This document shows, one piece after another, positions 10,008 to 42,315 of a stretch of DNA of 64,000 bases. Below the pieces are notes generated by a model that was given only the letters and a program-made list of their open reading frames with translations, was not told where the DNA came from and did no database searches. The position numbers and the translations under genes are program-made. This stretch comes from Squalus acanthias (Eukaryota). Within the stretch, counting starts at the first letter, position 1. Every line of letters starts with the position of its first letter. The DNA lies in the NCBI GenBank assembly GCA_030390025.1, contig CM059449.1:30690001-30754000 (forward strand). Direction: 5' to 3'.

Positions 10008-10353
10008 GTAAGTGTCCTCACAGAGATGGTGCAGCTACCCTGTGGCAGTAGGAAGGAATTTGTGTCGATACGGAGCCTTATGCTGTCTCTCAGAAACGGC
10101 CCGAACCACTTCACACCCAATAACTGACTTGGAATTAGCTGGTCATTGTCGCTTTCTGAGAGCAGCATGGCAGCTATTTGGTGCACAGTAAATAGCAATG
10201 AGATGAGTGATTTGTTCATCTGCTGTTGCTGGTGTGCATTGAGGGATAAATGTTGGCCATGAAACTGGGATGAATCGCTGGTAGGTTTTATTAGTGTTTA
10301 ACTGAACAGACAGACGGGGCCTTGAATTAAGGTCGCATTTAAAAGACGGCATC

Positions 10354-12312: not shown

Positions 12313-12794
12313 CAATTTAGGAAAACAAATTCCTCTGTGTCCTCCACAGAGAATTGAGGAAGGTGCAGGAGACATCAGTGGCTGTCATCACTGGTGCCCG
12401 TTAACCCCATACACCCTCTATAACTCGAGATATCGGCCAGCTCCCTTTCCAACACAGGGGAGGTACCAGAGGACTGGAGGACAGCTAACGTAGTACCATT
12501 ATTCAAGAAGTGTAGTAGGGATAAACCAGGGAATTACTGGCCAGTGAGCCTAACATCAGTGGTAGGGAAATTATTGGAAAAAATTCTGAAGGACAGAATT
12601 AGCCTCCACTTGGTGAGGCAAGGATTAATCAAGGATAGTCAGCATGGCTTTGTCAGGGGGAGATCATGGCCAATCAATTTGACTGAATTTTTCGAGGGGC
12701 TGACTAGGTGAGTGGATGAGGGTAGTGCAGTTGGTGTAGTCTACATGGACTTCAGTAAGGCTTTTGACAAAGGCATGGGAGACTGGTCAAGAAG

Positions 12795-15700: not shown

Positions 15701-16142
15701 TTCGCCAGCGCTCTGAGGTAGCGCCTCGCTCCTCGGCCTTTGCGCCTTAAGACAGGTGTGAAGCGCCTGATTTAGCGCTCCAATCACCTCCAGGGGCGAT
15801 AAAAGTCAAGTTTGCAGTCGGATGCGATAATTAGCGCCAGGCGCTAATCTTTGCGCCCGGCCGATAATTGCGCCCCAAATGGGGCGATACTGAATTTCTC
15901 CCCCATAGCCTTCAGGCTTTTTTTATAACACTCTTAGTCCTTTTAGAATTACTATTTACTGTAGCCCTGTTTGATTTACACCCTTGATTTCTCTGCCTTC
16001 CACTTTTGTGTTTCTCCTTCCTGTCTTTTGCTTCTATCCTTGCTTCCCTTTGCTTTGTTTCTCTGCTCAGGTTCCCAACCCCCTGCCATTTTAGTTTAAA
16101 CCCTCCCCAACAGCACTAGCAAACACTGCCCCCAGGACATCG
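12795..16142 (-). mobile_element. Younger CR1 (family A) nested antisense, carrying a MITE and an internal deletion
   Basis: ORFs 12891-14974 are nearly identical to the CR1 at 23121-27280; CTATG-type tail at the left end; 15905-16142 matches the ORF1/ORF2 junction of the longer copy. Confidence 0.92.
15012..15904. mobile_element. Non-autonomous TIR DNA transposon (MITE, PIF/Harbinger-like)
   Basis: Termini GGGGGAAAAATTCAG ... CTGAATTTCTCCCCC, CpG-rich subtermini, no coding capacity; homologous to 22588-27632 in the opposite orientation. Confidence 0.8.
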
Positions 16143-18034: not shown

Positions 18035-18310
18035 GTGTTTTCTTTGTCCAGGGAATGTGTGGCTGTGAAGTGAGCGGTGATAATTCCACGGACGGGTTTA
18101 TAAAGTTGGGATATGAGCGGGAGGATGCGTATGTTTTTGACAAGGACAGAACGCGTTGGATCGCGCTGAATCCAGAGTTCCAGGCGTTTGCGGATCGGTG
18201 GAATGCCAACACCTTCATGAACAAGTACTTCAAGGCTCTGTTGGAGAAGGACTGCGTGAAATGGCTGCTGATATACCTTGAGTGTGGGCGAGGAGCACTA
18301 GAGAGGATAG
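18035..18310 (+). CDS. MHC class I heavy chain, exon 3 (alpha2 domain)
   Basis: Acceptor CAAG at 18031-18034 gives phase 1 and 276 nt; donor GTACGT at 18311. Translation SVFFVQGMCGCE..GYERED..W..RW..LEKDCVKWLLIYLECG contains the C101-C164 pair, Q96, D122, W133, W147, W167 and Y171. Confidence 0.93.
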
Positions 18311-19184
18311 GTACGTTGTGGGAACGGCGACTGGGGGGGGGGGGGAGCGCTCCCGATGGCTCAGGTGGTACAGACCAGGTTTTTAGTCCCGGGTCTGTCC
18401 TGAGCCAGCTGTTCTTGGACAGGGTGGCAGTAAAGTGGAGCTGCAATTGGCCTGAATACCCCTTGCTTCGGGGCTGGCGGCGGGGGGGGGGGTGGGGGTA
18501 GGAATTCGGGCAGGTGACCTAAATCCGATGACTTACCCAGTCACCTTGGCTGGAAAGTGCCTGCACGTTGACATCGAGTGAGGATAGGATTAGAGTAAGC
18601 TGTGATACCCCCTTGGTTGAATAGCTTCCTCACTGTGTAGGCTCACCCGTGAACACTGGGTACTTGTGTGCGGTACAAGAGTGCGGCTTTACACAGAATT
18701 ACGTCGAATGTGCAGCGCGGGAAGAGGCTATTCGGCTCAACTGGTCTACGCCAGAGATTATGCTTCACACGAGCCTCCTCCCACCCCAATTCAGCGTATC
18801 CTTCCATTCCTTTCTCCCTCATGTGTTTATCCAGCTTCCCCTTAAAAGTATCTCTGTTATTTGCCTCAACCACTCCCTGTGGTAGCGAGTTCCACATTCT
18901 CACCACTCTCTGGGTAAAGAAGTTTCTCCTGAATTCCTTATTGGATTTATTAGTGACTATCTTATATTCATGGCCCCTAGTTCTGGTCTTGCCCACTCGT
19001 GGAAACATCTTCTCTACGTCTACCCTATCAAACCCTTTCATAATTTTAACGACCTCTATTAGGTCACCCCTCAGCCCTCTCTTTCCTAGTGCTGTATCTC
19101 AGCATCGGTCACCTGTCTCCAGCGGAGAAAGTTGATGGTGGTTGGGGAAAAGATAAAAGAACAAATAGAGAACTTCTCACGAAT

Positions 19185-20079
19185 ACAAAAAGTAAAATAC
19201 TGCGGATGCTGTAAATCTGAAATAAAAAGAGAAAAGGCTGGAAGTACTCAGCAGCATCTGTGGAGAGAGAAACAGAGTTAACGGCCCTGAAATTCGCCTC
19301 TCCGGCTTGCCGCGGGGGTAAGGATCGCGCGCGCACTTACCTACCGCGCCTGCCATTGACCTCTGGGCCCACAGGAACTTCAGCTCCTGGGACTCCTGCA
19401 GCTGCCGGCGCGCAGTGCTTGCGTGTTCCAGGGGCGCAGTTAGTGCGATGCGTCCCCTGGGATCACGTGGGCCATGGAGAGCCAATGGCAGCAGACCATC
19501 TTTCATTCATAGATTTGACAGGAAGACCTGTCAAATCTATGAATTGAAATCGGCCCCAAAAGAACAGCTAAACTTAAAATAATTTTTTTTAAAACATCAC
19601 ATTTATAAAATAACTATAAGTTAAATAAATTAACTACTTGAAACAAAACTTTAAATGTTTGAAAAAATTAAAATACTTTTTAACAGTGCTAAAAATAAAC
19701 TTAACTTTCTTTAAAGTATCTAAAAAAGATAAACCTGTTGAAAAAATTTTAAATTATAATTAATTAACCACTTACCTTGTTGAAAACGGGTCCTGTGCCT
19801 CCTTTTTAAAAGCGTAGGTTCTTCAATACTTACCCTCCCGGAGAAACCTGAAAAAAACCCTAAGTTTGCTGCGTGCGCCCAGCCTCTCCCGCTCACGCGG
19901 TTCACCTATGAACCGCCCCCTTCACCAGACCGGAAGTTCCGGTTTCCCGCGCATGCGCAGTGCATGCAGGAAACCGGCACTTCAGGACGCCTTACGGGTG
20001 AGTACACAGTGTGTACTCACCTGGGAAGGGCTGAATTTTTGGCCCAACGTTTCAGGTCGCTGACCTTTCATCAGAACTC
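19185..20079 (-). mobile_element. Penelope-type terminal repeat fragment with a minimal hammerhead ribozyme, split by a MITE
   Basis: Rejoining 20046-20079 with 19275-19279 gives, on the - strand, GAGTT-CTGATGA-A-AGGTC-AGC-GACCT-GAAA-CG-TT-AACTC: hammerhead core with stem I GAGTT/AACTC and stem II AGGTC/GACCT. Confidence 0.7.
19283..20045. mobile_element. MITE (PIF/Harbinger-like), second family
   Basis: Imperfect TIRs GGCCCTGAAATTCGCC ... GGGCTGAATTTTTGGCCC; 3 bp duplication AAC (19280-19282 and 20046-20048); GC-rich arms and a very AT-rich core. Confidence 0.8.
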
Positions 20080-20115
20080 GTCACTGACTTTAGTCTTTGT
20101 TTCACTCTCTCTCAG

Positions 20116-20388
20116 CCGCCCCTGAGGTGCTAATTGGGGATCGGAGCGACAGGGAGCGAGGGCTGAGGCTCTCCTGCCTCGTGACGGGCTTTTACCCACG
20201 GCCTATCGACGTGACCTGGCTGAGAAACGGCGAGGAGGTCCCCGACGTCGAATCCAGCGACCTGCTGCCCAACCAGGATGCGACGTTTCGGGTGATGAAA
20301 ACGATTGAGCTGAGCGGAGACGACGGGGAGAGATACTCCTGTCACATCGAGCACGCCAGCCTCCTGCTGGGGCTCGACGTACCCTGGG
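20116..20388 (+). CDS. MHC class I heavy chain, exon 4 (alpha3, C1-set Ig domain)
   Basis: Acceptor TCTCTCTCAG ending 20115, donor GTAAGT at 20389, 273 nt, phase 1/1. Motifs LSCLVTGFYPRPIDVTWLRNG, LLPNQDATF and YSCHIEHASL. Confidence 0.96.
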
Positions 20389-23120: not shown

Positions 23121-26100
23121 ATATCATTTAACTGTAGAGTAATTAGTGGGATTGATTTGATTTAATTTAATTTGAATTAATTAAAGGGTAAGTCATGGCA
23201 GGAGAGCTCGGCCCCGTGGTATGCTCCTCCTGCGCTATTTGGGAAATCGGGGACACTTCCTGTGCCCCTGACAACCATGTGTGCAGGAAGTGTATCCAGC
23301 TACAGCTACTGGCAGACCGCATTGCGGCGCTGGAGCTGCGATTGGATACATACTGGACCATTCGCGATGCTGAGGACGTCGTGGATATCACGTTTGAGCA
23401 GTTGGTCACACCGCAGGCAAAGGATGCACAGGCAGAAAGGGAATGGGTGACCAACAGACAGAGTAGTAGGCGCAGGCAGGTAGTGCAGGAGTCCCCTGTG
23501 GACATCCCCCTCTTAAACAGATATACCACTTATACCACTTTGAATACTGTTGGGGGGGATGGCTTATCAGAGGAAGGCAGCAGCAGACAACTTCCTGGCA
23601 CCAGGGGTGGCTCTGTTGCACGGGACGGGAGGAAAAAGAGTGGAAGAGCTATAGTGATAGGGGATTCTATTGTAAGTGGAATAGATAGGCGTTTCTGCGG
23701 CCGCAAACGAGACTCCAGGATGGTGTGTTGCTTCCCTGGTGCAAGGGTCAAGGATGTCTCAGAGCGGCTGCAGAACATTTTGGAAGGGGAGGGTGAACAG
23801 CCAGTTGTCATGGTGCATATAGGTACCAACGATATAGGTAAAAAAGGGGTTGAGGTCCTAAAAGCTGAATATAGGGAGTTAGGAGGTAAATTAAAAAATA
23901 GGACCTCAAAGGTAGTAATCTCAGGATTGCTACCAGTGCCACGTGCTAGTCAGAGTAGAAATAGAAGGATATTTCAGATGAATACGTGGTGAGAGGAATG
24001 GTGCAAGGGGGAGGGATTCAAATTCCTGGGACATTGGAACCAGTTCTGGGGGAGGTGGGACCAGTACAAACCGGACGGATTGTACCTGGGCAGGTCATGG
24101 ACCGATGTCCTAGGGGGAGTGTTTGCTAGTGCTCTGGGGGAGGGTTTAAACTAAAATGGCAGGGGGTTGGGAACCTGAGCAGGGAGACAGAGGAAAGGGA
24201 AACAAGGATAAAAGCAAAAGATAGGAAGGAGAAAAACAAAAGTGGCAGTGAGAGAAATCAACGGTTTAAATCAAACATGGCTACAGTAAATAATAATTCT
24301 GATAGGTCTAAGAGCGTTCAAAAAACAAGCCTGAAGGCTTTGTGTCTTAATGCAAGGAGCATTCGGAATAAGGTGGATGAATTAGCTGCGCAAATAGAGG
24401 TAAACGAATATGATTTGATTGGGATTACGGAAACATGGCTCCAGGGTGGCCAAGGCTGGGAACTCAACATCCAGGGGTATTCAATATTCAGGAAAGATAG
24501 GCAAAAAGGAAAGGGAGGTGGCGTAGCATTGCTGGTTAAAGAGGGGATTAATACAATTGTAAGGAAGGATATTAGCTCTGATGATGTGGAATCTGTATGG
24601 GTAGAACTGAGAAATACCAAGGAGTAGAAAACGTTTGTGGGAGTGGTATATAGACCTTCAAACAGTAATGCTGAGGTTGGGGATGGCATTAAAAGGGAAA
24701 TTAGAGAAGCGTGCAATAAGGGCACAGCAGTCATCATGGGTGACTTTAATCTACATATAGATTGGGCTAACCAAATTAGTAACGATACTGTGGAGGAGGA
24801 ATTCCTGGAGTGTTTACGGGATGGTTTCCTGGACCAATATGTCGAGGAACCAACCAGAGATCAGGCCATCTTAGTCTGGGTATTATGTAATGAGAAAGGA
24901 TTAATTAGCAATCTCGTTGTACGAGGCCCCTTGGGTCGGAGCGATCATAATATGATAGAATTCTTCATTAAGATGGAGAGTGAAGTAGTTGACTCAGAGA
25001 CTAGGGTCCGGAATTTAAATAAAGGAAACTACGATGGTATGAGGAGCGAGTTGGGTAGGATTGATTGGGGAATGTCACTCAAAGGGTTGACGGTGGATAG
25101 GCAATGTCAAACATTTAAAGACCGCATTCATGAACTACAGAATTTGTTCATCCCAGTTTGGCATAAGAATAAAACAAGAAAGGTGACTCAACCGTGGCTA
25201 ACAAGCGAAATTAGGGATAGCATAAGATCCAACGAGAGGACATATAAATTGGCCAGAAAAAGCAGTAAACCTGAGGATTGGGAGCAGTTTAGGATTCAAC
25301 AAGGGAGGACAAAGGGATTAATTAAGAAGGGGAAATAGAATATGAGAGGAAGCTTTCAGGGAACATAAAAACTGACTGTAAAAGCTTTTATAGATATGTG
25401 AAGAGAAAAAGATTGGTGAAGTCAAGCGTAGGTCCCTTGCAGTCAGAATCAGGGAAACTTATAATGGGGAACAAAGAAATGGCAGACCAATTAAATACAT
25501 ATTTTGGTTCTGTCTTCACAAAGGAGGACACAAATAACCTCCCAGAAATGTTGGGGAACATAGGGTCTGATGAAAGGGAGGAACTGAAAGAAATCAGTAT
25601 TTGTAGGGGAATGGTGTTAGGGAAATTGGCGGGATTGAAGGCCGATAAATCCCCAGGGCCTGATAATCTACATCCTAGGGTACTTAAGGAAGTGGCCCTA
25701 GAAATAGTAGATGCATTGCTGATCATCTTCCAACATTCGATGGAATCTGGAACAATACCCATGGATTGGAGGGTAGCTAATGTTACCCCACTATTCAAAA
25801 ATGATGGTAGAGAGAAAATAGGGAATTACAGACCGGTAAGCCTGACATTGGTAGTGGGGAAAATGCTAGAGTCCATTATAAAAGGTGTAATAACAGAGCA
25901 CTTGGAAAACAGTGACAGGATCGGACAAAGTCAACATGGATTTACAAAAGGTAAATCGTGCTTGACTAATCTACTGGAATTTTTTGAGGATGTAACTGGT
26001 AAAATAGATAAGGGAGAACCAGTGGATGTGGTGTATTTGGACTTTCAAAAGGCTTTCGATAAGGTCCCGCATAAGAGATTAGCGTGTAAAGTTAAGGCAC

Positions 26101-27280
26101 ATGGGATTGGGGGCAAGGTATTGACTTGGATAGAGAACTGGTTGGCAGACAGAAAGCAAAGAGTTGGAATAAACGGATCTTTTTCCGAGTGGCAGGCAGT
26201 GACTAGTGGGGTACCGCAGGGATCGGTCCTTGGACCCCAGCTATTCACAATATATATTAATGATCTAGACAAGGGAACTTGATGTAATATCTCCAAGTTT
26301 GCAGACGACACAAAGCTGGGTGGGCGTGTGTGCTGTGAGGAGGATGCCGAGAAACTCCAGGATGATTTGGACAGGTTGGGTGATTGGGCAGAAGCATGGC
26401 AGATGCAATATAACGTGGATAAATGCGAGGTTATCCACTTTGGTGTCAAAAACAGGAAGGCAGATTATTATCTGAATGGCAATAGATTGGGAGAAGGGGA
26501 AGTGCAACGAGACCTGGGTGTCCTTGTGCACCAGTCGCTGAAGGTAAGCATGCAGGTGCAGCAGGCGGTTAAGAAGGCAAATGGTATGTTGGCCTTCGTA
26601 GCGAGAGGGTTTGAGTACAGGAGCAAGGATGTCTTGCTGCAGTTGTACAGGGCCTTGGTGAGACCACATCTTGAGTATTGTGTGCAATTTTGGTCACCTT
26701 ATCTGAGGAAGGAGGTTCTTGCCATGGAAGGAGTTCAGCGAAGATTCACCAGACTGATACCTGGGATGGCAGGAATGACGTATGAGGAGAGATTGGGTCG
26801 ATTGGGCTTATAATCGCTGGAGTTTAGAAGAATGAGAGGGGATCTCATTGAAACTTGTAAAATTCTGACAGGACTGGACAGACTAGATGCAGGAAGGATG
26901 TTCCCGATGGCGGGGTAGTCCAGAACCAGGGGTCACAGTCTAAGGATAAGGGTGAGTTGGTCCAACGCCGGCATCTCCACATGATAAGGATAAGGGGTAA
27001 GCCATTTAGGACAGAAATGAGGAGGAATTTCTTCACCCAGAGAGTGGTGAACCTGTGGAATTCTCTACCACAGAAGGCAGTAGAGGCCAATTCATTAATA
27101 TATTCAAGAAGGAGTTGGATATATTTCTTAAGGCTAAAGGGATCAAGGGATATGGGGAGAAAGCAGGGACAGAGTTCTGAATTTGGATGATCAGCGATGA
27201 TCTCATTAAATGGCGGAGCGGGCTCGAGGGGCGAAATGGCCTAGTCCTGCTCCTATCGTCTATGTTTCTATGTTTCTATG
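23121..27280 (+). mobile_element. Near full-length but defective CR1 LINE (family A): ORF1 zinc finger + SGNH esterase, ORF2 APE endonuclease + RT
   Basis: ORF1 from 23195 (CSSC..CRKC, coiled coil, IVIGDSIV, HIGTND). ORF2 motifs [28 protein letters not shown] and [10 protein letters not shown]. Stops at 23990, 24625, 26280 and 26811, frameshift near 25335; (TTTCTATG)n tail; TGGT on both flanks. Confidence 0.95.
26953..26984 (+). mobile_element. 32 nt tail-only footprint of the Penelope-like element
   Basis: TGAGTTGGTCCAACGCCGGCATCTCCACATGA between two copies of TAAGGATAAGGG (26941-26952 and 26985-26996); absent from sister CR1 copies (e.g. ~31912); 21/23 match to the reverse complement of 38198-38220. 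Confidence 0.85.
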
Positions 27281-27709: not shown

Positions 27710-30700
27710 AGAAATAAACAATTGCATTCATATGTCGCATTTCACAGTCGCAGGAGGTCACTTCTGAAGTGTAATCACTGTTATAACATAGGCAACACAG
27801 CAGCCAATTTTATGCATAGCAAGATGCCACAAACAGCAATGAGATAATGATCAGATAATTTGTTTTAGTGATATTGGTTGAGGAACGATGATTGGCCACG
27901 ACATAGGGAGAACTCTCAAGCTCCTTTTAGAAATAGTGCCATGGGATATTTTATGTCCACCTGAGAGGGCAGACGGCCTCAGTTTAACGTCTCATCAGAA
28001 AGTTCTCACCACCGACAGTGTAGCGCTCCCTCAGTACTGCCCCTCTGACAGTGCAGCGCTCCCTCAGTACTGCCCCTCCGACAGTGCAGCGCTCCCTCAG
28101 TACTGCCCCTCCGACAGTGCAGCGCTCCCTCAATACTGCCCCTCTGACAGTGCAGCGCTCCCTCAGTACTGCCCCTCCAACAGTGTAGCGCTCCCTCAGT
28201 ACTGCCCCTCCGACAGTGCAGCCCTCCCTCAGTACTGCCCCTCCGACAGTGTAGCGCTCCCTCAGTACTGCCCCTCCGACAGTGCAGCGCTCCCTCAGTA
28301 CTGGCCCTCTGACAGTGCAGCACTCCCTCAGTACTGCCCCTCCAACAGTGTAGCGCTCCCTCAGTACTGCCCCTCCGACAATGCAGCGCTCCCTCAATAC
28401 TGCTCCTCTGACAGTGTAACGCTCCCTCAGTACTGCCCCTCTGACAGTGCAGCGCTCCCTCAGTACTGGCCCTCTGACAGTGCAGCACTCCCTCAGTACT
28501 GCCCCTCCAACAGTGTAGCGCTCCCTCAGTACTGCCCCTCTGACAATGCAGCGCTCCCTCAATACTGCTCCTCTGACAGTGCAGCACTCCCTCAGTACTG
28601 CTCCTCTGACAGTGCAGCACTCCCTCAGTACTGCTCCCTCCGACAGTGCAGCACTCCCTCAGTACTGCCCCTCCGACAGTGCAGCTCACCCTCAGTACTG
28701 CCCCTCCGACAGTGCAGCGCTCCCTCAGTACTGCCCCTCCGACAGTGCAGCTCACCCTCAGTACTGCCCCTCCGACAGTGCAGCGCTCCCTCAGTACTGC
28801 CCCTCCGACAGTGCAGCGCTCCCTCAGTACTGCCCCTCCGACAGTGCAGCGCTCCCTCAGTACTGCCCCTCCGACAGAGCATCGCTCCCTCAGTACTGCT
28901 CCCTCCGACAGTGCAGCACTCCCTCAGTACTGCCCCTCCGACAGTGTAGCGCTCCCTCAGCACTGCCCCTCCGACAGTGCAGCGCTGCCTCAATACTGCC
29001 CCTCCGACAATGCAGTGCTGCCTCAGTACCGCCCCTCTGACAGTGCAGTGCTGCCTCAGTACTGCCCCACCGACAGTGCAGCACTCCCTCAGTATTGCCC
29101 CTCCAACAGTGCAGCACTCTCTCAGCACTGCCCCTCCGACAGTGCAGCGCTCCCTCAGTACTGCCCCTCCGACAGTGTAGCGCTCCCTCAGTACTGCCCC
29201 TCCGACAGTGCAGCACTCCCTCAGTACTGCCCCTCCAACAGAGCAGCACTCCCTCAGTACTGCCCCTCCGACAGAGCAGCACTCCCTCAGTACTGCCCCT
29301 CCGACAGTGCAGCTCTCCCTCAGTACTGCCCCTCCGACAGAGCAGCACTCCCTCAGTACTGCCCCTCCGACAGTGCAGCTCTCCCTCAGTACTGCCCCTC
29401 CGACAGAGCAGCACTCCCTCAGTACTGCCCCTCCGACAGTGCAGCGCTCCCTCAGTACTGCCCCTCCGACAGTGCAGCTCTCCCTCAGTACTGCCCCTCC
29501 GACAGAGCAGCACTCCCTCAGTACTGCCCCTCCGACAGTGCAGCTCACCCTCAGTACTGCCCCTCCGACAGAGCATCGCTCCCTCAGTACTGCCCCTCCG
29601 ACAGTGCAGCACTCCCTCAGTACTGCCCCTCCGACAGTGCAGCTCTCCCTCAGTACTGCCCCTCCGACAGTGCAACTCTCCCTCAGTACTGCCCCTCCGA
29701 CAGTGCAGCTCACCCTCAGTACTGCCCCTCCGACAGAGCATCGCTCCCTCAGTACTGCTCCCTCCGACAGTGCAGCGCTCCCTCAGTACTGCCCCTCCAA
29801 CAGTGCAGCGCTCCCTCAGTACTGCCCCTCCGACAGTGCAGCTCACCCTCAGTACTGCCCCTCCGACAGAGCATCGCTCCCTCAGTACTGCCCCTCCGAC
29901 AGTGCAGCACTCCCTCAGTACTGCCCCTCCGACAGTGCAGCACTCCCTCAGTACTGCCCCTCCGACAGTGCAGCGCTCCCTCAGTACTGCCCCTCCGACA
30001 GTGTAGCGCTCCCTCAGCACTGCCCCTCCGACAGTGCAGCGCTGCCTCAATACTGCCCCTCCGACAATGCAGTGCTGCCTCAGTACCGCCCCTCTGACAG
30101 TGCAGTGCTGCCTCAGTACTGCCCCACCGACAGTGCAGCACTCCCTCAGTATTGCCCCTCCAACAGTGCAGCACTCTCTCAGCACTGCCCCTCCGACAGT
30201 GCAGCGCTCCCTCAGTACTGCCCCTCCGACAGTGTAGCGCTCCCTCAGTACTGTGTCTCCGACAGTGCAGCACTCCCTCAGTACTGCCCCTCCAACAGAG
30301 CAGCACTCCCTCAGTACTGCCCCTCCGACAGAGCAGCACTCCCTCAGTACTGCCCCTCCGACAGTGCAGCTCTCCCTCAGTACTGCCCCTCCGACAGTGC
30401 AGCTCTCCCTCAGTACTGCCCCTCCGACAGTGCAGCTCTCCCTCAGTACTGCCCCTCCGACAGTGCAGCTCTCCCTCAGTACTGCCCCTCCGACAGTGCA
30501 ACTCTCCCTCAGTACTGCCCCTCCGACAGTGCAGCGCTCCCTCAGTACTGCCCCTCCAACAGTGTAGCGCTCCCTCAGTACTGCCCCTCCGACAGTGCAG
30601 CGCTCCCTCAGTACTGCCCCTCCAACAGTGTAGCGCTCCCTCAGTACTGCCCCTCCGACAGTGCAGCGCTCCCTTAGTACTGCACTGCAGTTTCAGCCTA

Positions 30701-33090: not shown

Positions 33091-36000
33091 TTTTTTCTTT
33101 CAAAAGCATATTCCTACCTCCCTTGTAAATGTTTCACTGTGTTACACTGAGGATAAGCCCCTTCAATTGCTCATATAGCACAATTAGTACATGGACTGCC
33201 CAATCTAGAACTAAGACATACAGACCAGAGGGTCCCAGGTTCAACCCCGGGCCTGCCCTGAGGCAGGGGGTTTGAACTGGCCAGCCAGCCTTGTTCTTAA
33301 ATGGAGAATGCACAACAGGGCATGTTAGAATGGTGGCACAGAGAGGGTTACTCCACAGAAGGAGGCCCATTGTGTCCGTGCTCCTTGTTCTGCGTCAATC
33401 CCACTGCCCTGCTTTCTCCCCATAGTCCTGTATCAATCCCAAACTAATCCCACTGCCCCACTCTCTCCCCATAGTCCTGTATCAATCCCAAACTAATCCC
33501 ACTGCCCTGCTCTCTCCCCATAGCCCTGTATCAATCCCAAACTAATCCCACTGCCCCGCTCTCTCCATAGCCCTGTATCAATCCCCAACTAATCCCACTG
33601 CCCCACTCTCTCCCCATAGTCCTGTATCAATCCCACACTAATCCCACTGCCCCACTCTCTCCATAGCCCTGTATCAATCCCAAACTAATCCCACTGCCCA
33701 ACTCTCTCCACAGCTCTGTACTAATCCCACTGCCCCACTTTCTCTCCACAGCCCTGTATCAATCCCACACTAATCCTACTGCCCCACTCTCTCCACAGCC
33801 CTGTATCAATCCCAAACTAATCCCACTGCCCCAATCCCTCCACAGCCCTGTATCAATCCCAAACTAATCCCACTGCCCCACACTCTCCCCATAGTCCTGT
33901 ATCAATCCCACACTAATCCCACTGCCCCACTCTCTCCACAGCCCTGTATCAATCCCAAAATAATCCCACTGCCCCACGCTCTCCCCATAGTCCTGTATCA
34001 ATCCCACACTAATCCCACTGCCCCACTCTCTCCACAGCCCTGTATCAATCCCAAAATAATCCCACTGCCCCACTCTCTCCCCATAGTCCTGTATCAATCC
34101 CACACTAATCCCACTGCCCCATTCCCTCCACAGCCCTGTATCAATCCCAAACTAATCCCACTGCCCCAATCCCTCCACAGCCCTGTATCAATCCCAAACT
34201 AATCCCACTGCCCCACACTCTCCCCATAGTCCTGTATCAATCCCACACTAATCCCACTGCCCCACTCTCTCCACAGCCCTGTATCAATCCCAAAATAATC
34301 CCACTGCCCCACGCTCTCCCCATAGTCCTGTATCAATCCCACACTAATCCCACTGCCCCACTCTCTCCACAGCCCTGTATCAATCCCAAAATAATCCCAC
34401 TGTCCCTCTCTCTCCCCATAGTCCTGTATCAATCCCACACTAATCCCACTGCCCCAATCTCTCCATAGTCCAGTATCAATCCCACACTAATCCCACTGCC
34501 CCACTTTCTCCCCACAGCCCTGTATCAATCCCACACTAATCCTACTGCTCCACTCTCTCCCCATAGCCCGGTATCAATCCCAAACTAATCCCACTGCCCC
34601 ACTCTCTCCACAGCCCTGTATCAATCCCAAACTAATCCCACTGCCTCACTCTCTCCCCATAATCCTGTATCAATCCCACACTAATCCCACTGCCCCATTC
34701 CCTCCACAGCCCTGTATCAATCCCACACTAATCCCACTGCCCCGCTCTCTCTCCACAGCCCTGTATCAATCCCACACTAATCCCACTGCCCCACTCTCTC
34801 CCCATAGTCCTGTATCAATCCCACACTAATCCCACTGCCCCACTCTCTCCACAGCCCTGTATCAATCCCACACTAATCCCACTGCCCCACTCTCTCCCCA
34901 TAGTCCTGTATCAATCCCACACTAATCCCACTGCCCCACTCTCGTCCATAGTCCGGTATCAATCCCAAACTAATCCCACTGCCCCACTCTCTCCACAGCC
35001 CTGTATCAATCCCAAACTAATCCCACTGCCCCACTCTCTCCCCATAGTCCTGTATCAATCCCACACTAATCCCACTGCCCCATTCCCTCCACAGCCCTGT
35101 ATCAATCCCATACTAATCCCACTGCCCCACTCTCTCCACAGCCATGTATCAATCCCAAACTAATCCCACTGTCCCTCTCTCTCCCCATAGTCCTGTATCA
35201 ATCCCACACTAATCCCACTGCCCCACTCTCTCCACAGCCCTGTATCAATCCCACACTAATCCCACTGCCCCACTTTCTCCCCACAGCCCTGTATCAATCC
35301 CACACTAATCCTACTGCTCCACTCTCTTCCCATAGCCCGGTATCAATCCCAAACTAATCCCACTGCCTCACTCTCTCCCCTAGTCCTGTATCAATCCCAC
35401 ACTAATCCCACTGCCCCATTCCCTCCACAGCCCTGTATCAATCACAAACTAATCCCACTGCCCCACTCTCCCCACAGCCCTGTATCAATCCCACACTAAT
35501 CCCACTGCCCCACTCTCTCCCCATAGTCCTGTATCAATCCCACACTAATCCCACTGCCCCACTCTCGTCCATAGTCCGGTATCAATCCCACACTAATCCC
35601 ACTGCCCCACTCTTTCCACAGCCCTGTATCAATCCCAAACTAATCCCACTGCCCCACTCTCTCCCCATAGTCCTGTATCAATCCCACACTAATCCCACTG
35701 CCCCACTCTCTCCACAGCCCTGTATCAATCCCAAACTAATCCCACTGCCCCACTCTCTCCCCACAGCCCTGTATCAATCCCACACTAATCCCACTGCCCC
35801 ACTCTCTCCACAGCCCTGTATCAATCCCACACTAATCCCACTGCCCCACTTTCTCCCCACAGCCCTGTATCAATCCCACACTAATCCTACTGCCCCACTC
35901 TCTCCACAGCCCTGTATCAATCCCAAACTAATCTCACTGCCCCACTCTCTCCCCATAGTCATCTATCAATCCCACACTAATCCCACTGCCCCATTCCCTC

Positions 36001-38283
36001 CACACCCCTGTATCAATCCCAAACTAATCCCACTGCCCCACTCTCTCCACAGCCCTGTATCAATCCCACACTAATCCCACTGCCCCACTCTCTCCCCATA
36101 GTTCTGTATCAATCCCACACTAATCCCACTGCCCCACTCTCTCCACAGCCCTGTACTAATCCCACTGCCCCACTTTCTCCCCACAGCCCTGTATCAATCC
36201 CACACTAATCCGACTGCCCCACTCTCTCCCCATAGTCCTGTATCAATCCCACACTAATCCCACTGCCCCACTCTCGTCCATAGTCCTGTATCAATCCCAC
36301 ACTAATCCCACTGCCCCACTCTTTCCACAGCCCTGTATCAATCCCAAACTAATCCCACTGCCCCACTCTCTCCCCATAGTCCTGTATCAATCCCACACTA
36401 ATCCCACTGCCCCACTCTCTCCACAGCCCTGTATCAATCCCAAACTAATCCCACTGCCCCACTCTCTCCACAGCCCTGTATCAATCCCAAACTAATCCCA
36501 CTGCCCCACTCTCTCCCCATAGTCCTGTATCAATCCCACACTAATCCCACTGCCCCACTCTCTCCACAGCCCTGTATCAATCCCAAACTAATCCCACTGC
36601 CCCACTCTCTCCACAGCCCTGTATCAATCCCACACTAATCCCACTGCCCCACTCTCTCCCCATAGTCCTGTATCAATCCCACACTAATCCCACTGCCCCA
36701 CTCTCTCCACAGCCCTGTATCAATCCCAAACTAATCCCACTGTCCCTCTCTCTCCCCATAGTCCTGTATCAATCCCACACTAATCCCACTGCCCCAATCT
36801 CTCCATAGTCCAGTATCAATCCCACACTAATCCCACTGCCCCACTTTCTCCCCACAGCCCTGTATCAATCCCACACTAATCCGACTGCTCCACTCTCTCC
36901 CCACAGCCCGGTATCAATCCCAAACTAATCCCACTGCCCCACTCTCTCCACAGCCCTGTATCAATCCCAAACTAATCCCACTGCCTCACTCTCTCCCCAT
37001 AATCCTGTATCAATCCCACACTAATCCCACTGCCCCATTCCCTCCACAGCCCTGTATCAATCCCAAACTAATCCCACTGCCCCACTCTCTCCACAGCCCT
37101 GTATCAATCCCACACTAATCCCACTGCCCCACTCTCTCCCCATAGTCCTGTATCAATCCCACACTAATCCCACTGCCCCACTCTCTCCACAGCCCTGTAT
37201 CAATCCCACACTAATCCCACTGCCCCACTCTCTCCCCATAGTCCTGTATCAATCCCACACTAATCCCACTGCCCCACTCTCGTCCATAGTCCGGTATCAA
37301 TCCCAAACTAATCCCACTGCCCCACTCTCTCCACAGCCCTGTATCAATCCCAAACTAATCCCACTGCCCCACTCTCTCCCCATAGTCCTGTATCAATCCC
37401 ACACTAATCCCACTGCCCCATTCCCTCCACAGCCCTGTATCAATCCCATACTAATCCCACTGCCCCACTCTCTCCACAGCCCTGTATCAATCCCAAACTA
37501 ATCCCACTGTCCCTCTCTCTCCCCATAGTCCTGTATCAATCCCACACTAATCCCACTGCCCCACTCTCTCCACAGCCCTGTATCAATCCCACACTAATCC
37601 CACTGCCCCACTTTCTCCCCACAGCCCTGTATCAATCCCACACTAATCCTACTGCTCCACTCTCTTCCCATAGCCCGGTATCAATCCCAAACTAATCCCA
37701 CTGCCTCACTCTCTCCCCATAGTCCTGTATCAATCCCACACTAATCCCACTGCCCCATTCCCTCCACAGCCCTGTATCAATCACAAACTAATCCCACTGC
37801 CCCACTCTCCCCACAGCCCTGTATCAATCCCACACTAATCCCACTGCCCCACTCTCTCCCCATAGTCCTGTATCAATCCCACACTAATCCCACTGCCCCA
37901 CTCTCGTCCATAGTCCGGTATCAATCCCACACTAATCCCACTGCCCCACTCTTTCCACAGCCCTGTATCAATCCCAAACTAATCCCACTGCCCCACTCTC
38001 TCCCCATAGTCCTGTATCAATCCCACACTAATCCCACTGCCCCACTCTCTCCACAGCCCTGTATCAATCCCAAACTAATCCCACTGCCCCACTCTCTCCC
38101 CACAGCCCTGTATCAATCCCACACTAATCCCACTGCCCCACTCTCTCCACAGCCCTGTATCAATCCCACACTAATCCCACTGCCCCACTTTCTCCCGATG
38201 CGGAGATGCCGGTGTTGGACTGGGGTGGACAAAATTGAGAGGTCGCACAACACCAGGTTATAGTCCAACAGTTTTATTTGAAA

Positions 38284-38321
38284 TCACAAGCTTTCGGAAC
38301 TATCGCTCCTTCCTCAGGTGA
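38284..38321 (-). ncRNA. Mirror copy of the minimal hammerhead ribozyme
   Basis: Exact reverse complement of 38939-38976. Confidence 0.75.
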
Positions 38322-38938
38322 AGTAAATTGGATACAGAATCGTCAGAGCATATATAGATGGAAAAAAAAGCATGTGTACTTTACAATTGCAGACCAATAA
38401 ATTAAATCATCCTGACTATCTGCCGAGGTGTGATAAAGTTAATTAAGTCAGCCAGGAAGGTACCACATCAAAAGACATAGCAAGATACAACTGAGACAAT
38501 GAGGTGAAGTCGCAGGGGTTCTAACGTGTCAAAAGCTGCCGTCTGTATGTAAAACGAAAAGCTTTAAAAAAAAAAATTTACTTTTTTACTGGGAAAATTT
38601 TTACTTTTTTACTGGGAATCACATCTTGTTCACAGATGTGATTCCCAGTAAAAAAGTAAAAATTTTCCCAGTAAAAAAGTAAATTTTTTTTTTTAAAGCT
38701 TTTCGTTTTACATACAGACGGCAGCTTTTGACACGTTAGAACCCCTGCGACTTCACCTCATTGTCTCAGTTGTATCTTGCTATGTCTTTTGATGTGGTAC
38801 CTTCCTGGCTGACTTAATTAACTTTATCACACCTCGGCAGATAGTCAGGATGATTTAATTTATTGGTCTGCAATTGTAAAGTACACATGCTTTTTTTTCC
38901 ATCTATATATGCTCTGACGATTCTGTATCCAATTTACT

Positions 38939-38976
38939 TCACCTGAGGAAGGAGCGATAGTTCCGAAAGCTTGTGA
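38939..38976 (+). ncRNA. Minimal type I hammerhead ribozyme motif
   Basis: TCAC-CTGAGGA-A-GGAGC-GATA-GTTCC-GAAA-GC-TT-GTGA: CUGANGA and GAAA core, stem I TCAC/GTGA, stem II GGAGC/GTTCC, palindromic AAGCTT in place of stem III; predicted cut after 38972. Confidence 0.75.
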
Positions 38977-41900
38977 TTTCAAATAAAACTGTTGGACTAT
39001 AACCTGGTGTTGTGCGACCTCTCAATTTTGTCCACTTTCTCCCCACAGCCCTGTATCAATCCCACACTAATCCTACTGCCCCACTCTCTCCACAGCCCTG
39101 TATCAATCCCAAACTAATCTCACTGCCCCACTCTCTCCCCATAGTCATCTATCAATCCCACACTAATCCCACTGCCCCATTCCCTCCACACCCCTGTATC
39201 AATCCCAAACTAATCCCACTGCCCCACTCTCTCCACAGCCCTGTATCAATCCCACACTAATCCCACTGCCCCACTCTCTCCCCATAGTTCTGTATCAATC
39301 CCACACTAATCCCACTGCCCCACTCTCTCCACAGCCCTGTACTAATCCCACTGCCCCACTTTCTCCCCACAGCCCTGTATCAATCCCACACTAATCCGAC
39401 TGCCCCACTCTCTCCCCATAGTCCTGTATCAATCCCACACTAATCCCACTGCCCCACTCTCGTCCATAGTCCTGTATCAATCCCACACTAATCCCACTGC
39501 CCCACTCTTTCCACAGCCCTGTATCAATCCCAAACTAATCCCACTGCCCCACTCTCTCCCCATAGTCCTGTATCAATCCCACACTAATCCCACTGCCCCA
39601 CTCTCTCCACAGCCCTGTATCAATCCCAAACTAATCCCACTGCCCCACTCTCTCCACAGCCCTGTATCAATCCCAAACTAATCCCACTGCCCCACTCTCT
39701 CCCCATAGTCCTGTATCAATCCCACACTAATCCCACTGCCCCACTCTCTCCACAGCCCTGTATCAATCCCAAACTAATCCCACTGCCCCACTCTCTCCAC
39801 TGCCCTGTATCAATCCCAAACTAATCCCACTGCCCCACTCTCTCCACAGCCCTGTATCAATCCCACACTAATCCCATTGCCCCACTCTCTCCCCATAGTC
39901 CTGTATCAATCCCACACTAATCCCACTGCCCCACTCTCGTCCATAGTCCTGTATCAATCCCACACTAATCCCACTGCCCCATTCTCGTCCATAGTCCGGT
40001 ATCAATCCCAAACTAATCCCACTGCCCCACTCTCTCCACAGCCCTGTATCAATCCCAAACTAATCCCACTGCCCCACTCTCTCCACAGCCCTGTATCAAT
40101 CCCACACTAATCCCATTGCCCCACTCTCTCCCCATAGTCCTGTATCAATCCCACACTAATCCCACTGCCCCACTCTCGTCCATAGTCCTGTATCAATCCC
40201 ACACTAATCCCACTGCCCCACTCTTTCCACAGCCCTGTATCAATCCCAAACTAATCCCACTGCCCCACTCTCTCCCCATAGTCCTGTATCAATCCCACAC
40301 TAATCCCACTGCCCCACTCTCTCCACAGCCCTGTTTCAATCCCAAACTAATCCCACTGCCCCACTCTCTCCCCATAGCCCTGTATCAATCCCACACTAAT
40401 CCCACTGCCCCACTCTCTCCACAGCCCTGTATCAATCCCAAACTAATCTCACTGCCCCACTCTCTCCACAGCCCTGTATCAATCCCAAACTAATCTCACT
40501 GCCCCACTCTCTCCCCATAGTCCTGTGCTAATCCCACTCCCTCCACAGTCCTGTATCAATCCCACACTAATCCCACTGCCCCACTCTCTCCCCATAGTCC
40601 TGTATCAATCCCACACTAATCCCACTGCCCCACTCTCTCCCCATAGTCCTGTATCAATCACAAACTAATCCCACTGCCCCACTCTCTCCACAGCCCTGTA
40701 TCAATCCCAAACTAATCCCACTGCCCCACTCTCTCCACATAGCCCTGCATTAATCCCACACTAATCCCACTGCCCCACTCTCTCCACAGCCCTGTATCAA
40801 TCCCAAACTAATCTCACTGCCCCACTCTCTCCACAGCCTTGTATCAATCCCAAACTAATCTCACTGCCCCACTCTCTCCCCATAGTCCTGTGCTAATCCC
40901 ACTCCCTCCACAGCCCTGTATCAATCCCACACTAATCGCACTGCCCCACTCTCTCCCCATAGTCCTGTATCAATCCCACACTAATCCCACTGCCCCACTC
41001 TCTCCCCATAGTCCTGTATCAATCACAAACTAATCCCACTGCCCCACTCTCTCCACAGCCCTGTATCAATCCCAAACTAATCCCACTGCCCCACTCTCTC
41101 CCCATAGTTCTGTATCAATCCCACACTAATCCCACTGCCCCACTCTCGTCCATAGTCCGGTATCAATCCCAAACTAATCCCACTGCCCCACTCTCTCCAC
41201 TGCCCTGTATCAATCCCAAACTAATCCCACTGCCCCACTCTCTCCACAGCCCTGTATCAATCCCACACTAATCCCATTGCCCCACTCTCTCCCCATAGTC
41301 CTGTATCAATCCCACACTAATCCCACTGCCCCACTCTCGTCCATAGTCCTGTATCAATCCCACACGAATCCCACTGCCCCACTCTTTCCACAGCGCTGTA
41401 TCAATCCCAAACTAATCCCACTGCCCCACTCTCTCCCCATAGTCCTGTATCAATCCCACACTAATCCCACTGCCCCACTCTCTCCACAGCCCTGTTTCAA
41501 TCCCAAACTAATCCCACTGCCCCACTCTCTCCCCATAGCCCTGTATCAATCCCACACTAATCCCACTGCCCCACTCTCTCCACAGCCCTGTATCAATCCC
41601 ACACTAATCCCACTGCCCCACTCTCTCCCCACAGCCCTGTATCAATTCCACACTAATTCTACTGCCCCACTCTCTCCACAGCCCTGTATCAATCCCAAAC
41701 TAATCTCACTGCCCCACTCTCTCCCCATAGTCCTCTATCAATCCCACACTAATCCCAGTGCCCCATTCCCTCCACACCCCTGTATCAATCCCAAACTAAT
41801 CCCACTGCCCCACTCTCTCCACAGCCCTGTATCAATCCCACACTAATCCCACTGCCCCACTCTCTCCCCATAGTCCTGTATCAATCCCAAACTAATCCCA

Positions 41901-42115
41901 CTGCCCCACTCTCTCCCCATAGTCCTGTATCAATCCCACACTAATCCCACTGCCCCACTCTCTCCACAGCCCTGTATCAATCCCAAACTAAACCCACTGC
42001 CCCACTCTCTCCCCATAGTCCTGTATCAATCCCACACTAATCCCACTGCCCCACTCTCTCCACAGCCCTGTATCAATCCCAAACTAAAATGATATTGATC
42101 TTGGGCAACACGGTG

Positions 42116-42315
42116 NNNNNNNNNNNNNNNNNNNNNNNNNNNNNNNNNNNNNNNNNNNNNNNNNNNNNNNNNNNNNNNNNNNNNNNNNNNNNNNNNNNNN
42201 NNNNNNNNNNNNNNNNNNNNNNNNNNNNNNNNNNNNNNNNNNNNNNNNNNNNNNNNNNNNNNNNNNNNNNNNNNNNNNNNNNNNNNNNNNNNNNNNNNNN
42301 NNNNNNNNNNNNNNN
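42116..42315. other. Assembly gap (200 N)
   Basis: Run of exactly 200 N, i.e. a fixed-size scaffold join of unknown true length. Confidence 0.99.

What the first reader, a model, noticed from the sequence alone, without database searches (positions are those of the whole stretch)
38185..39043. Perfect 402 bp hairpin retro-insertion with a hammerhead ribozyme in each arm
Seen: two arms I read as exact reverse complements (even the 11 nt A/T run), a 7 nt loop, a 28 nt unpaired tail, a 12 bp target duplication and no ORF. Each arm reads outward as ATTGG (38862), TATATA (38904), hammerhead (38939-38976), AATAAA (38982). The empty site survives in the sister satellite block at ~35845, so the insertion postdates that duplication. 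Established: Penelope-like elements carry minimal hammerheads in their pseudo-LTRs and can form inverted ends with a short 3' tail. Inference: a recently active, non-autonomous, ribozyme-bearing fold-back element, probably made by snap-back priming during reverse transcription, with outward-facing promoters into the satellite.
Basis: partly seen in the sequence, partly recalled or inferred. Interest (0 to 1): 0.85.

Follow-up and report, generated by a model that had tools for sequence, protein, structure and literature searches.

The report
Penelope-type hairpin retro-insertion in satellite
A young insertion made of two mirror-image end fragments of a Penelope-like retroelement, each carrying a minimal hammerhead ribozyme motif, sits in a satellite array; the structure is real but is a known signature of this element class.

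Summary
The arms are 38225-38626 and 38634-39035: 402 nt, 100% complementary, 7-nt loop. A 28-nt tail lies on one side only. The target duplication is 12 bp, of which 4 bp are shared with the arm end. A paralogous empty site matches the flanks 800/800. There is no ORF above 51 aa.

Each arm carries one minimal type-I hammerhead motif. It has every feature published for Penelope-like-element (PLE) min-hammerheads (PMC4209133). It is found only there in the window and 0 times in 300 shuffles. Rfam's models do not score it, and cleavage is untested.

Head-to-head inverted 5'-truncated copies, a one-sided tail, a short duplication and a hammerhead are the published PLE insertion signature (PMC8557442, PMC3846280, PMC11167929). 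Contigs of four public runs show a highly repeated family whose copies end at the same tail boundary, with further arm-to-arm junctions.

No RT/GIY-YIG partner could be linked, and no read-level confirmation of this locus was obtained. Unchecked first-stage notes of this scan list other Penelope palindromes elsewhere in this genome.

Verdict: a real, recent, ordinary PLE-type insertion. How the fold-back arose (snap-back or dual priming) remains open.

The parts
38185..38196 (.). left copy of the target-site duplication (12-mer)
   Evidence: Same 12-mer at 39032-39043; present once at the empty site 35846-35857.
38197..38224 (-). 28-nt one-sided 'tail': the extreme 3' end of the element (sense on the - strand), absent from the right arm
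   Evidence: Unpaired. 93/116/31/22 contigs of X1/X2/X7/X12 run on unlike before 38197. 21 of 23 nt shared with the tail-only copy at 26960-26982. 20 of 28 nt are A or C (counted by eye on the sequence).
38225..38626 (-). left arm: 5'-truncated 3' part of the element, sense on the - strand
   Evidence: 402 nt, 100% complementary to 38634-39035.
38284..38321 (-). minimal type-I hammerhead motif of the left arm; predicted cut between 38288 and 38287 on the - strand
   Evidence: Descriptor hit, mirror image of the right-arm motif.
38627..38633 (.). 7-nt loop at the turn-round point
38634..39035 (+). right arm: the same 5'-truncated 3' part, sense on the + strand, lacking the tail
   Evidence: Its last 4 nt are shared with the target duplication.
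38939..38976 (+). minimal type-I hammerhead motif: helix I 38939-38942 with 38973-38976; core CUGAGGA 38943-38949; extra A 38950; helix II 38951-38955 with 38960-38964; loop 38956-38959; GAA 38965-38967; palindromic AGCU 38968-38971; U17 at 38972; predicted cut 38972/38973
   Evidence: Descriptor built from the features listed in PMC4209133: 2 hits in 64 kb on both strands and 0 in 300 shuffles. The minimum-energy fold forms helices I and II. No Rfam hit.
38904..38909 (+). TATATA, about 35 nt upstream of the hammerhead (mirrored in the left arm); promoter role is inference only
   Evidence: Sequence. pLTR TATA boxes are described in PMC3846280. No expression data.
38982..38987 (+). AATAAA just downstream of the hammerhead; motif only
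   Evidence: Sequence.
39032..39043 (.). right copy of the target-site duplication; its first 4 nt overlap the arm (microhomology)
35846..35857 (.). paralogous empty site in the sister satellite block
   Evidence: 800/800 match of the joined flanks at 35458-36257; block duplication at offset 2341.
26953..26984 (+). older 32-nt tail-only copy of the same element end, flanked by a 12-bp duplication (26941-26952 = 26985-26996)
   Evidence: 23-nt blastn match, 91.3%.

Best explanation
One recent retrotransposition event of a Penelope-like element (PLE) family left two head-to-head copies of the same 5'-truncated 3' end (pLTR-type sequence with a minimal hammerhead) in a satellite unit. Proposed steps: (1) The element's endonuclease cut the two strands about 12 bp apart (inferred from the duplication). 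(2) The + strand 3'-OH after 38196 primed reverse transcription at the outer start site of the RNA. This gave the tail and left arm as cDNA (the orientation and family boundary are shown; the priming is inferred). (3) After about 437 nt the polymerase left the RNA and copied its own nascent cDNA back, which gave a perfectly symmetric second arm with a 7-nt loop (inferred). (4) That strand was joined to the other target end at a 4-nt microhomology, 28 nt short of the cDNA start, leaving the tail on one side only (the microhomology is shown; the joining is inferred). Each arm then points outward, with a TATA-like motif, a min-hammerhead and AATAAA. The copy is dead on arrival because it has no ORF. 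Identity as a PLE-type single-event retro-insertion: about 0.85. The snap-back step in particular: about 0.5.
For: Anatomy of the insertion. The empty site matches the flanks 800/800. [quoted passage not shown] It gives 2 hits in the window and 0 in 300 shuffles. That paper also reports dual min-hammerheads ~100-700 bp apart on opposite strands; here they are about 620 bp apart. Published PLE signature: an inverted 5'-truncated copy and a 30-40-bp tail at one end only (PMC8557442); a 31-bp tail, 8-10-bp duplications and palindromes at inverted junctions read as self-priming (PMC3846280); a tail lying between two RT start sites, with initiation at a site not homologous to the target (PMC11167929). 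Here too the tail junction shows no homology. Family behaviour in four runs: 21887, 15103, 2524 and 2321 contigs were laid. Many leave the sequence at 38197. 13 of the 15 listed joints run from the left arm to the right arm, that is, they look like other fold-back copies. Relatives carry the canonical CUGAUGA core with a fully paired helix II (loose ends at 38962 and 38965). The tail-only copy has the same 12-bp duplication length. Microhomology at only one junction fits a last-formed junction after snap-back.
Against: No RT plus GIY-YIG ORF with this terminus was found. The arm matches nothing else in the window. 0 of 10 ORFs scanned carry GIY-YIG. No curated repeat library was available. Rfam's hammerhead models give nothing at E<=10. 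The motif's fold is no more stable than shuffles (z -1.13, 27 of 200). The tail is 28 nt, just under the published 30-40. No contig listed bridges a junction or the loop with 31 nt on each side, so the locus is not confirmed outside the assembly. The arm-to-arm joints have sides of only 20-28 nt, which the tool marks as weak. The nascent cDNA has no hairpin-forming sequence at the turn-round point. The second arm ends at about the inner edge of the tail, as dual priming would also predict.
Confidence: 0.55

Rival explanations
1. Same PLE family and a single event, but the palindrome arose by priming on both target strands. One 3'-OH started at the outer RT start site (tail included) and the other at the inner start site (tail excluded). 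One nascent cDNA then switched onto the other and copied it.
For: In vitro, the anole PLE protein cleaves and extends both top and bottom strands, starts at two adjacent sites that bracket the tail, and is predicted to be a dimer (PMC11167929). The right arm ends within 0-4 nt of the inner edge of the tail. 10 of the 13 arm-to-arm joints listed are asymmetric, as unequal cDNAs would give.
Against: The arm lengths here agree within 7 nt, which would need two independent cDNAs to stop at the same place. That is expected only at a defined RNA 5' end, for which there is no evidence. The right junction shows 4-nt microhomology, whereas the published start sites are not homologous to the target. The joints have sides under 31 nt.
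Confidence: 0.25
2. Sequencing or assembly artefact: a fold-back chimeric long read, or a missed adapter, produced the perfect palindrome.
For: 100% identical arms with a tiny loop are what such artefacts look like. PLE tandem and inverted structures are said to trouble assemblies (PMC8557442). No bridging contig was seen.
Against: Both flanks keep the same orientation and continue the satellite exactly. The flanks show a 12-bp duplication and an 800/800 empty-site match. A fold-back read would invert one flank. The arms are unequal by exactly the family's tail, and the outer end is the family boundary seen in four runs.
Confidence: 0.04
3. A DNA-level event: a Foldback- or MITE-type DNA transposon with long terminal inverted repeats, or a simple insertion that later became palindromic through replication template switching or hairpin-capped break repair.
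For: Long inverted arms with a short loop and a flanking duplication also describe Foldback-like elements.
Against: The 28-nt asymmetry. A 32-nt tail-only solo copy with a 12-bp duplication indicates 3'-anchored, 5'-truncating insertion. The last ~60-100 nt are about 5-10 times deeper than the inner part in all four runs. The duplication encloses the whole palindrome, so a second event would have had to leave no scar.
Confidence: 0.05
4. A SINE-like element mobilised by a LINE (CR1/L2 type, present in the window), inverted by twin priming; the hammerhead-like motif would be fortuitous.
For: LINE RT and endonuclease ORFs are abundant in the window. Rfam does not recognise the motif.
Against: Twin priming, as I recall it for L1 (no call), joins different parts of an element and does not give two identical arms. 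The arm shares no sequence with the LINEs of the window. The motif meets every PLE min-hammerhead feature, with 0 chance hits. There is no poly(A) or microsatellite tail.
Confidence: 0.05

Closest known systems
Penelope-like element insertions with an inverted pLTR and a 'tail' (e.g. Pen2a_Av of Adineta vaga; general scheme in Craig et al. 2021)
   Same: Head-to-head inverted 5'-truncated copy, an optional ~30-bp extension at one end only, a short target duplication (8-10 bp there, 8-12 here), a TATA-like motif in the repeat, and palindromic inverted junctions read as self-priming (PMC3846280 passages; PMC8557442 passages).
   Different: Nothing lies between the inverted copies here: no ORF and no direct pLTR pair. 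The tail is 28 nt. The host is a vertebrate satellite. Sequence kinship to any named PLE clade (Poseidon, Neptune) could not be tested.
Minimal hammerheads of metazoan PLEs (Cervera and de la Pena 2014)
   Same: [quoted passage not shown] That paper also notes pairs of such motifs ~100-700 bp apart on opposite strands (PMC4209133, parts 1-2 of 4 read).
   Different: Helix II is 5 bp with one G-U pair (7-8 bp in the Schistosoma families). N7 is G. Activity is unknown. The published motifs cleave poorly, and only as dimers.
PAc (Poseidon of Anolis carolinensis) in vitro system
   Same: The tail is explained by two adjacent internal RT start sites in an AC-rich stem-loop, with initiation not homologous to the target. 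Here the tail is 71% A+C, forms one strand of a predicted stem (not significant), and its junction lacks homology (PMC11167929 passages).
   Different: PAc prefers AT-rich targets (5'-ATT-3'); the two targets seen here are not AT-rich. No protein or RNA data exist for this family.
Animal non-LTR retrozymes
   Same: Short non-coding hammerhead-bearing repeats related to PLE pLTRs, reported in one chondrichthyan among 31 vertebrates (preprint 10.64898/2026.07.22.740005; abstract, part 1 of 2 of the Results and passages read).
   Different: Retrozymes are direct tandem repeats that can give circular RNA. This locus is an inverted pair, so it cannot yield a unit bounded by two same-strand ribozymes.
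L1 twin-priming inversions (recalled; no call)
   Same: A 5' inversion created during target-primed reverse transcription within one duplication.
   Different: Twin priming joins different segments of the element. Here both arms are the same segment, base for base.

Membership tests
Penelope-like elements (insertion signature) | Inverted 5'-truncated copy adjoining the element (head-to-head) | tested here: met
   Arms 402 nt, 100% complementary, sense strands pointing outward; feature as described in PMC8557442.
Penelope-like elements (insertion signature) | 30-40-bp 'tail' present at one end only | tested here: met
   A 28-nt extension on the left arm only, slightly under the published range. 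Loose-end consensus shows other copies at least 6 nt longer.
Penelope-like elements (insertion signature) | Short target-site duplication enclosing the whole compound insert | tested here: met
   8-12 bp; the empty site matches 800/800.
Penelope-like elements | Hammerhead motif in the terminal repeat | tested here: met
   Min-hammerhead descriptor hit in each arm, 0 in 300 shuffles. Motif level only.
Penelope-like elements | Autonomous partner: TERT-like RT plus GIY-YIG endonuclease ORF sharing the terminus | not testable with these tools
   No other copy in the window. GIY-YIG in 0 of 10 ORFs scanned. One RT ORF is jockey/LINE-like. No eukaryotic genome or repeat library at hand. Scans of metagenome and viral contigs found 0.
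Hammerhead ribozyme (type I, minimal) | Conserved core C3-A9, G12-A14, H17, with helices I and II | tested here: met
   Core CUGAGGA, then GAA, then U17. Helix I 4 bp, helix II 5 bp.
Hammerhead ribozyme (type I, minimal) | Helix III, formed here only between two molecules through a palindromic 15.x-16.x | tested here: inconclusive
   AGCU is self-complementary, and all 22 pairs of a double-hammerhead model are standard pairs. The unconstrained cofold gave another pairing, and this locus has no second same-strand copy.
Hammerhead ribozyme (Rfam families) | Match to a curated covariance model | tested here: not met
   No hammerhead among 41 matches at E<=10 in 1051 nt, nor in the single match in 141 nt. 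From my own knowledge, these models include a helix III that min-hammerheads lack.
Hammerhead ribozyme | Self-cleavage | not testable with these tools
   Needs transcription and cleavage assays of monomer and dimer.
Non-LTR retrozyme | Direct tandem repeats, each with a same-strand hammerhead | tested here: not met
   The two motifs lie on opposite strands. The arm has no direct repeat.
Foldback/MITE DNA transposon | Symmetric terminal inverted repeats, with no 3'-anchored truncated solo copies | tested here: not met
   One-sided 28-nt tail; 32-nt tail-only copy with its own duplication.

The most novel reading that the evidence does not exclude
In this family the turn-round points of fold-back copies are not random. 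They cluster at the hammerhead (the helix II hairpin and the predicted cut). Of the 13 arm-to-arm joints listed, 9 re-enter the right arm between 38956 and 38981. The step to 5-10-fold higher contig depth falls within one 35-nt bin of the predicted cleavage site on both arms. If real, the ribozyme's structure or its cleavage would define where PLE reverse transcription ends or turns back. That would be the first genomic read-out of a role for the hammerhead in PLE transposition. A genome rich in young perfect palindromes could then decide between self-priming and dual priming. Read-through of such loci would also give perfect 400-bp hairpin RNA, a possible source of small RNAs against the family.
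Probability: 0.15. Interest if true: 0.55.

Novelty: new member of a known kind. Interest (0 to 1): 0.25.

Why it matters
On its own this is one more Penelope-type compound insertion. Its value is as a clean specimen. It has zero arm divergence, an exact empty site 2.3 kb away, a tail on one side, and microhomology at only one junction. How PLEs make inverted repeats and tails is still unsettled in the literature (PMC8557442, PMC11167929). A genome with many such young copies would allow a quantitative test of self-priming against dual-strand priming, and of whether the hammerhead takes part. For annotation, perfect palindromes of this kind in this genome are better read as PLE products than as assembly errors.

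Tried and rejected
Rfam scans of 38100-39150 and 38900-39040 at E<=10 gave only hairpin-driven look-alikes of miRNA and sRNA families, all below their gathering scores, and no hammerhead. I therefore tested the motif with my own descriptor. It was written after I had seen the motif, from features listed in PMC4209133, so it is partly post hoc.

Thermodynamic tests are not significant. The hammerhead stretch gives z -1.13, with 27 of 200 shuffles as stable. The 3' terminal 91 nt give z -0.51, with 61 of 200.

Search for other copies or an autonomous partner. In the window, blastn found only the two arms and a 23-nt tail match. A 24-mer scan found 0 in metagenome contigs and 0 in viral contigs. 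An 18-mer occurs in 0 papers. Pfam on 10 of the 57 ORFs of 130 aa or more gave RVT_1 in 5, Exo_endo_phos_2 in 1, weak GDSL/OSK in 1, nothing in 3, and GIY-YIG in 0. PDB sequence searches of three RT ORFs each gave 0 hits. The Atlas called ORF 3701-4288 jockey/LINE-like. I did not scan the other 47 ORFs.

Reads. The look-up of sequencing runs listed 22 runs; 20 hold part of the stretch, 6 hold half its words or more, from 7 studies, and none is on record as RNA. I laid 4 of the 22 (X1, X2, X7, X12). All are short Logan contigs. So neither presence in an independent individual nor expression could be settled. X7 and X12 are only guessed to be RNA, and they also hold the satellite.

Rejected readings. 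Two independent nested insertions: rejected because of the single duplication and exact symmetry. L1-type twin priming: rejected because the two arms are the same segment. A duplication that is only satellite periodicity: rejected because the empty site shows the 12-mer once with 800/800 flanks.

Other points. Script one search printed nothing because its filter was too strict; redid it. The search of earlier findings was blank by words and by sequence. The paper listing was seen as a listing only and not used. I did not ask for supplements. Three sets may bear on whether this family is already catalogued: the supplementary figures and table of PMC4209133 (vertebrate min-hammerhead families), Supplementary Tables 2 and 5 of the 2026 preprint (chondrichthyan retrozyme and PLE families), and Figs S1-S2 of PMC11167929. 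The age figures in the full report use neutral substitution rates that I recall; they come from no call. My impression that the repeats of this window look like those of cartilaginous fishes is recall only and untested.

Full report
OBSERVATION

The stretch 38185-39043 lies inside a 47-49-bp C-rich satellite that runs from 33397 to 42087. The repeat finder reports one inverted repeat with arms 38225-38626 and 38634-39035: 402 nt, 100% complementary, 7 nt between. A script confirmed exact reverse complementarity. It also showed that pairing stops at the first base beyond the arms.

Left of the left arm lie 28 nt (38197-38224) with no counterpart on the right. The 12-mer at 38185-38196 recurs at 39032-39043. 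Its first four letters on the right are also the last four paired letters of the right arm. The duplication is therefore 8-12 bp, with a 4-nt microhomology at that junction.

A probe made of 400 nt of each flank, with the 12-mer counted once, matches 35458-36257 at 800 of 800; the next best place scores 711 of 800. Identity runs 477 nt to the left and 757 nt to the right before the first mismatch. This sister site belongs to a ~2341-bp tandem block duplication within the satellite. The blocks 33397-37332 and 35738-40514 are 95.4% identical over 3964 columns, and 196-200 of 200 around the site.

Five ORFs of 40 aa or more touch the region. None exceeds 51 aa inside the insertion, and none starts with ATG.

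THE HAMMERHEAD

Rfam gives no hammerhead match at E<=10, either in 1051 nt (41 matches, all hairpin look-alikes below gathering) or in 141 nt (one weak miRNA match).

Read by hand on the + strand of the right arm, 38939-38976 has these parts:
- helix I of 4 bp (38939-38942 with 38973-38976);
- the core CUGAGGA;
- one extra A;
- helix II of 5 bp, starting with G-C and holding one G-U, closed by a 4-nt loop;
- GAA;
- the self-complementary AGCU;
- a U at position 17.

The predicted cut lies between 38972 and 38973.

Cervera and de la Pena (PMC4209133; I read parts 1 and 2 of 4) define min-hammerheads of metazoan PLEs as type-I motifs without helix III that should act as dimers. They list four features that emerged beyond their descriptor:
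- a G10.1-C11.1 pair;
- palindromic 15.2-16.2;
- consensus families with compensatory changes.

They also describe a short helix I of 4-5 bp. The first three features and the short helix I are met here.

A descriptor that I wrote from these features finds exactly two hits in the 64-kb window on both strands, one per arm. It finds none in 300 first-order shuffles of 33.4 kb scanned on both strands. The descriptor was written after I had seen the motif.

The minimum-energy fold of the stretch forms helices I and II. It is not more stable than shuffles (z -1.13, 27 of 200). All 22 pairs of a double-hammerhead model are standard pairs. The unconstrained cofold of two copies chose a different pairing.

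Loose ends show relatives with the canonical CUGAUGA core and a fully paired helix II. This copy's G-U pair is a one-sided change that keeps the pair. I saw no two-sided compensatory change. So the motif is real and of the PLE type; activity is untested.

WHAT THE ARMS ARE

In sense orientation each arm runs from the loop outward and ends with the hammerhead, about 60 nt, and (left arm only) the 28-nt tail. The arm matches nothing else in the window except 23 nt at 26960-26982 (21 of 23). There, a 32-nt insert (26953-26984) made of little more than the tail is flanked by its own 12-bp duplication. A copy truncated to its last 32 nt, with a duplication of the same length, indicates 3'-anchored, 5'-truncating insertion through RNA.

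Of 22 public runs listed, 20 hold part of the stretch, from 7 studies and at least four coded organisms. I laid four of them, all kept as short Logan contigs. The numbers of contigs laid were 21887, 15103, 2524 and 2321, so the family is highly repeated.

One search showed three things:
- 93, 116, 31 and 22 contigs leave the sequence just before 38197 with unlike flanks. The outer end of the tail is therefore a family boundary. The loose letters end in the same six letters in all four runs, so many copies have a slightly longer tail.
- The last ~60-100 nt of each arm carry about 5-10 times the summed contig depth of the inner 300 nt.
- Of the 15 joints listed (161 were not shown), 13 run from the left arm to the right arm, that is, they look like other fold-back copies. 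Three of these are exactly symmetric (38279/38981, 38298/38962, 38325/38935) and ten are not.

The 38298/38962 class turns round inside helix II. All these joints have sides of 20-28 nt, below the 31 that the tool asks for, so they are leads. No listed contig bridges either junction or the loop of this locus. The locus itself is thus not confirmed outside the assembly.

COMPARISON WITH WHAT IS KNOWN

Craig et al. (PMC8557442, passages) describe PLE insertions as highly 5'-truncated. They often have an inverted 5'-truncated copy adjoining, and a 30-40-bp tail often at one end only.

Arkhipova et al. (PMC3846280, passages) show inverted pLTRs with a 31-bp tail and 8-10-bp duplications. They also report a TATA box in the pLTR and palindromes at inverted junctions, which they read as self-priming. 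They note that head-to-head is the common arrangement.

Frangieh et al. (PMC11167929, passages) show in vitro that an anole PLE starts reverse transcription at two adjacent internal sites that bracket the tail. These sites lie in an AC-rich stem-loop and are not homologous to the target. The protein cuts and extends both strands.

Cervera and de la Pena also mention pairs of min-hammerheads ~100-700 bp apart on opposite strands; here they are about 620 bp apart.

A 2026 preprint (abstract, part of the Results and passages read) derives animal retrozymes from PLE pLTRs and reports them in one chondrichthyan.

The present structure is therefore the published PLE insertion signature in its smallest form: two truncated ends and nothing between. 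The tail here is 28 nt and 71% A+C. It forms one strand of a predicted stem, though that fold is not significant (z -0.51). Its junction with the target shows no homology.

MECHANISM

What is shown:
- one duplication encloses both arms;
- the arms are identical;
- the tail is on one side;
- microhomology is at the tail-less junction only;
- both sense strands point outward.

What is inferred (best reading): target-primed reverse transcription from the + strand end at 38196, starting at the outer start site. The polymerase then turned back onto the nascent cDNA after about 437 nt. The new strand was captured by the other target end at the 4-nt microhomology.

The main rival uses the published two-strand extension: outer start site on one side, inner start site on the other, then a switch between the two cDNAs. 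It explains why the second arm ends at about the inner edge of the tail. It needs both cDNAs to stop within 7 nt of each other.

I put the two readings at about 0.5 and 0.25. An assembly fold-back is unlikely (about 0.04), because both flanks keep their orientation and reproduce the empty site exactly. DNA-level palindrome formation and a LINE-driven SINE take about 0.05 each.

AGE

There are 0 differences in 402 arm positions and 0 in 1234 flank positions against the sister block. With neutral rates of about 1-2 per 10^9 sites per year (recalled, no call), this bounds the age to roughly a few million years or less. Gene conversion between the arms or between the blocks could mimic youth.

FUNCTION

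The copy has no ORF and cannot move by itself. The promoter reading (ATTGG, TATATA about 35 nt upstream of the hammerhead, AATAAA after it) fits what is said of pLTRs. It rests on short motifs only. No run was shown to be RNA.

Because the two hammerheads lie on opposite strands, no transcript of this locus has two same-strand copies. Cleavage, if any, would need a second molecule. Read-through of the whole locus would give a perfect 402-bp RNA hairpin; this is an inference.

MEMBERSHIP

The structural features of a PLE insertion and the min-hammerhead are met. The defining protein partner (RT plus GIY-YIG sharing the terminus) could not be tested. The window has none: GIY-YIG in 0 of 10 ORFs scanned, and one RT ORF is jockey/LINE-like. 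No eukaryotic genome or repeat library was at hand, and the two collection scans found nothing. I therefore file it as PLE-type with about 0.85 confidence, not as proven.

EARLIER NOTES OF THIS SCAN

First-stage notes, unchecked, list the tail-only scar in my window, which I verified. They also list many Penelope palindromes, fold-back derivatives with the junction at the hammerhead, and a 164-bp hammerhead-bearing element on other pieces of the same genome. I could not read those windows. They agree with the arm-to-arm joints and gave the lead for the novel case. They are not independent evidence.

VERDICT

It is a new member of a known kind. Interest 0.25.

Noticed in passing
window 26941-26996: A 32-nt tail-only copy of the same element end (26953-26984, + sense, 21 of 23 nt shared with the tail), flanked by a 12-bp duplication. 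It lies inside the 3' part of a LINE.
   Followed up: yes
window 33397-42087: A 47-49-bp C-rich satellite (about 181 units) holding a ~2341-bp tandem block duplication (33397-37332 against 35738-40514, 95.4% overall, near 100% around the insertion site).
   Followed up: partly
window 42116-63999: A 200-N gap at 42116-42315 separates the C-rich satellite from a purine-rich 22-bp satellite of about 998 units (42316-63999, 93% matches). The mechanical ORFs of thousands of codons on the - strand there are artefacts of the repeat.
   Followed up: no
window 4826-5216, 6299-6717, 10353-12311, 28012-30683: Four patches of one 33-bp satellite in both orientations (12 to 81 units, 78-92% matches). Two of them lie inside the span that a first-stage note calls an MHC class I gene (7401-20388, not checked by me).
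   Followed up: no
window 23195-26813 and 971-4288, 13218-17132: LINE remnants: an ORF with weak GDSL-lipase/OSK matches, Exo_endo_phos_2 and RVT_1 in a row at 23195-26282, and further RVT_1 fragments elsewhere. ORF 3701-4288 is jockey-like by the Atlas. No GIY-YIG was seen.
   Followed up: partly
window 38275-38309 and 38940-39009 (contig depth): In all four runs the summed contig depth rises 5-10-fold within one 35-nt bin of the predicted hammerhead cut. 9 of the 13 listed arm-to-arm joints re-enter the right arm at 38956-38981. Many family copies may start or turn round at the ribozyme.
   Followed up: partly
window 38571-38616 (mirrored at 38642-38687): A 23-nt A/T-rich direct duplication (2 copies, 91% identical) next to the 11-nt A/T run, near the 5'-truncation point of the arm.
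   Followed up: no
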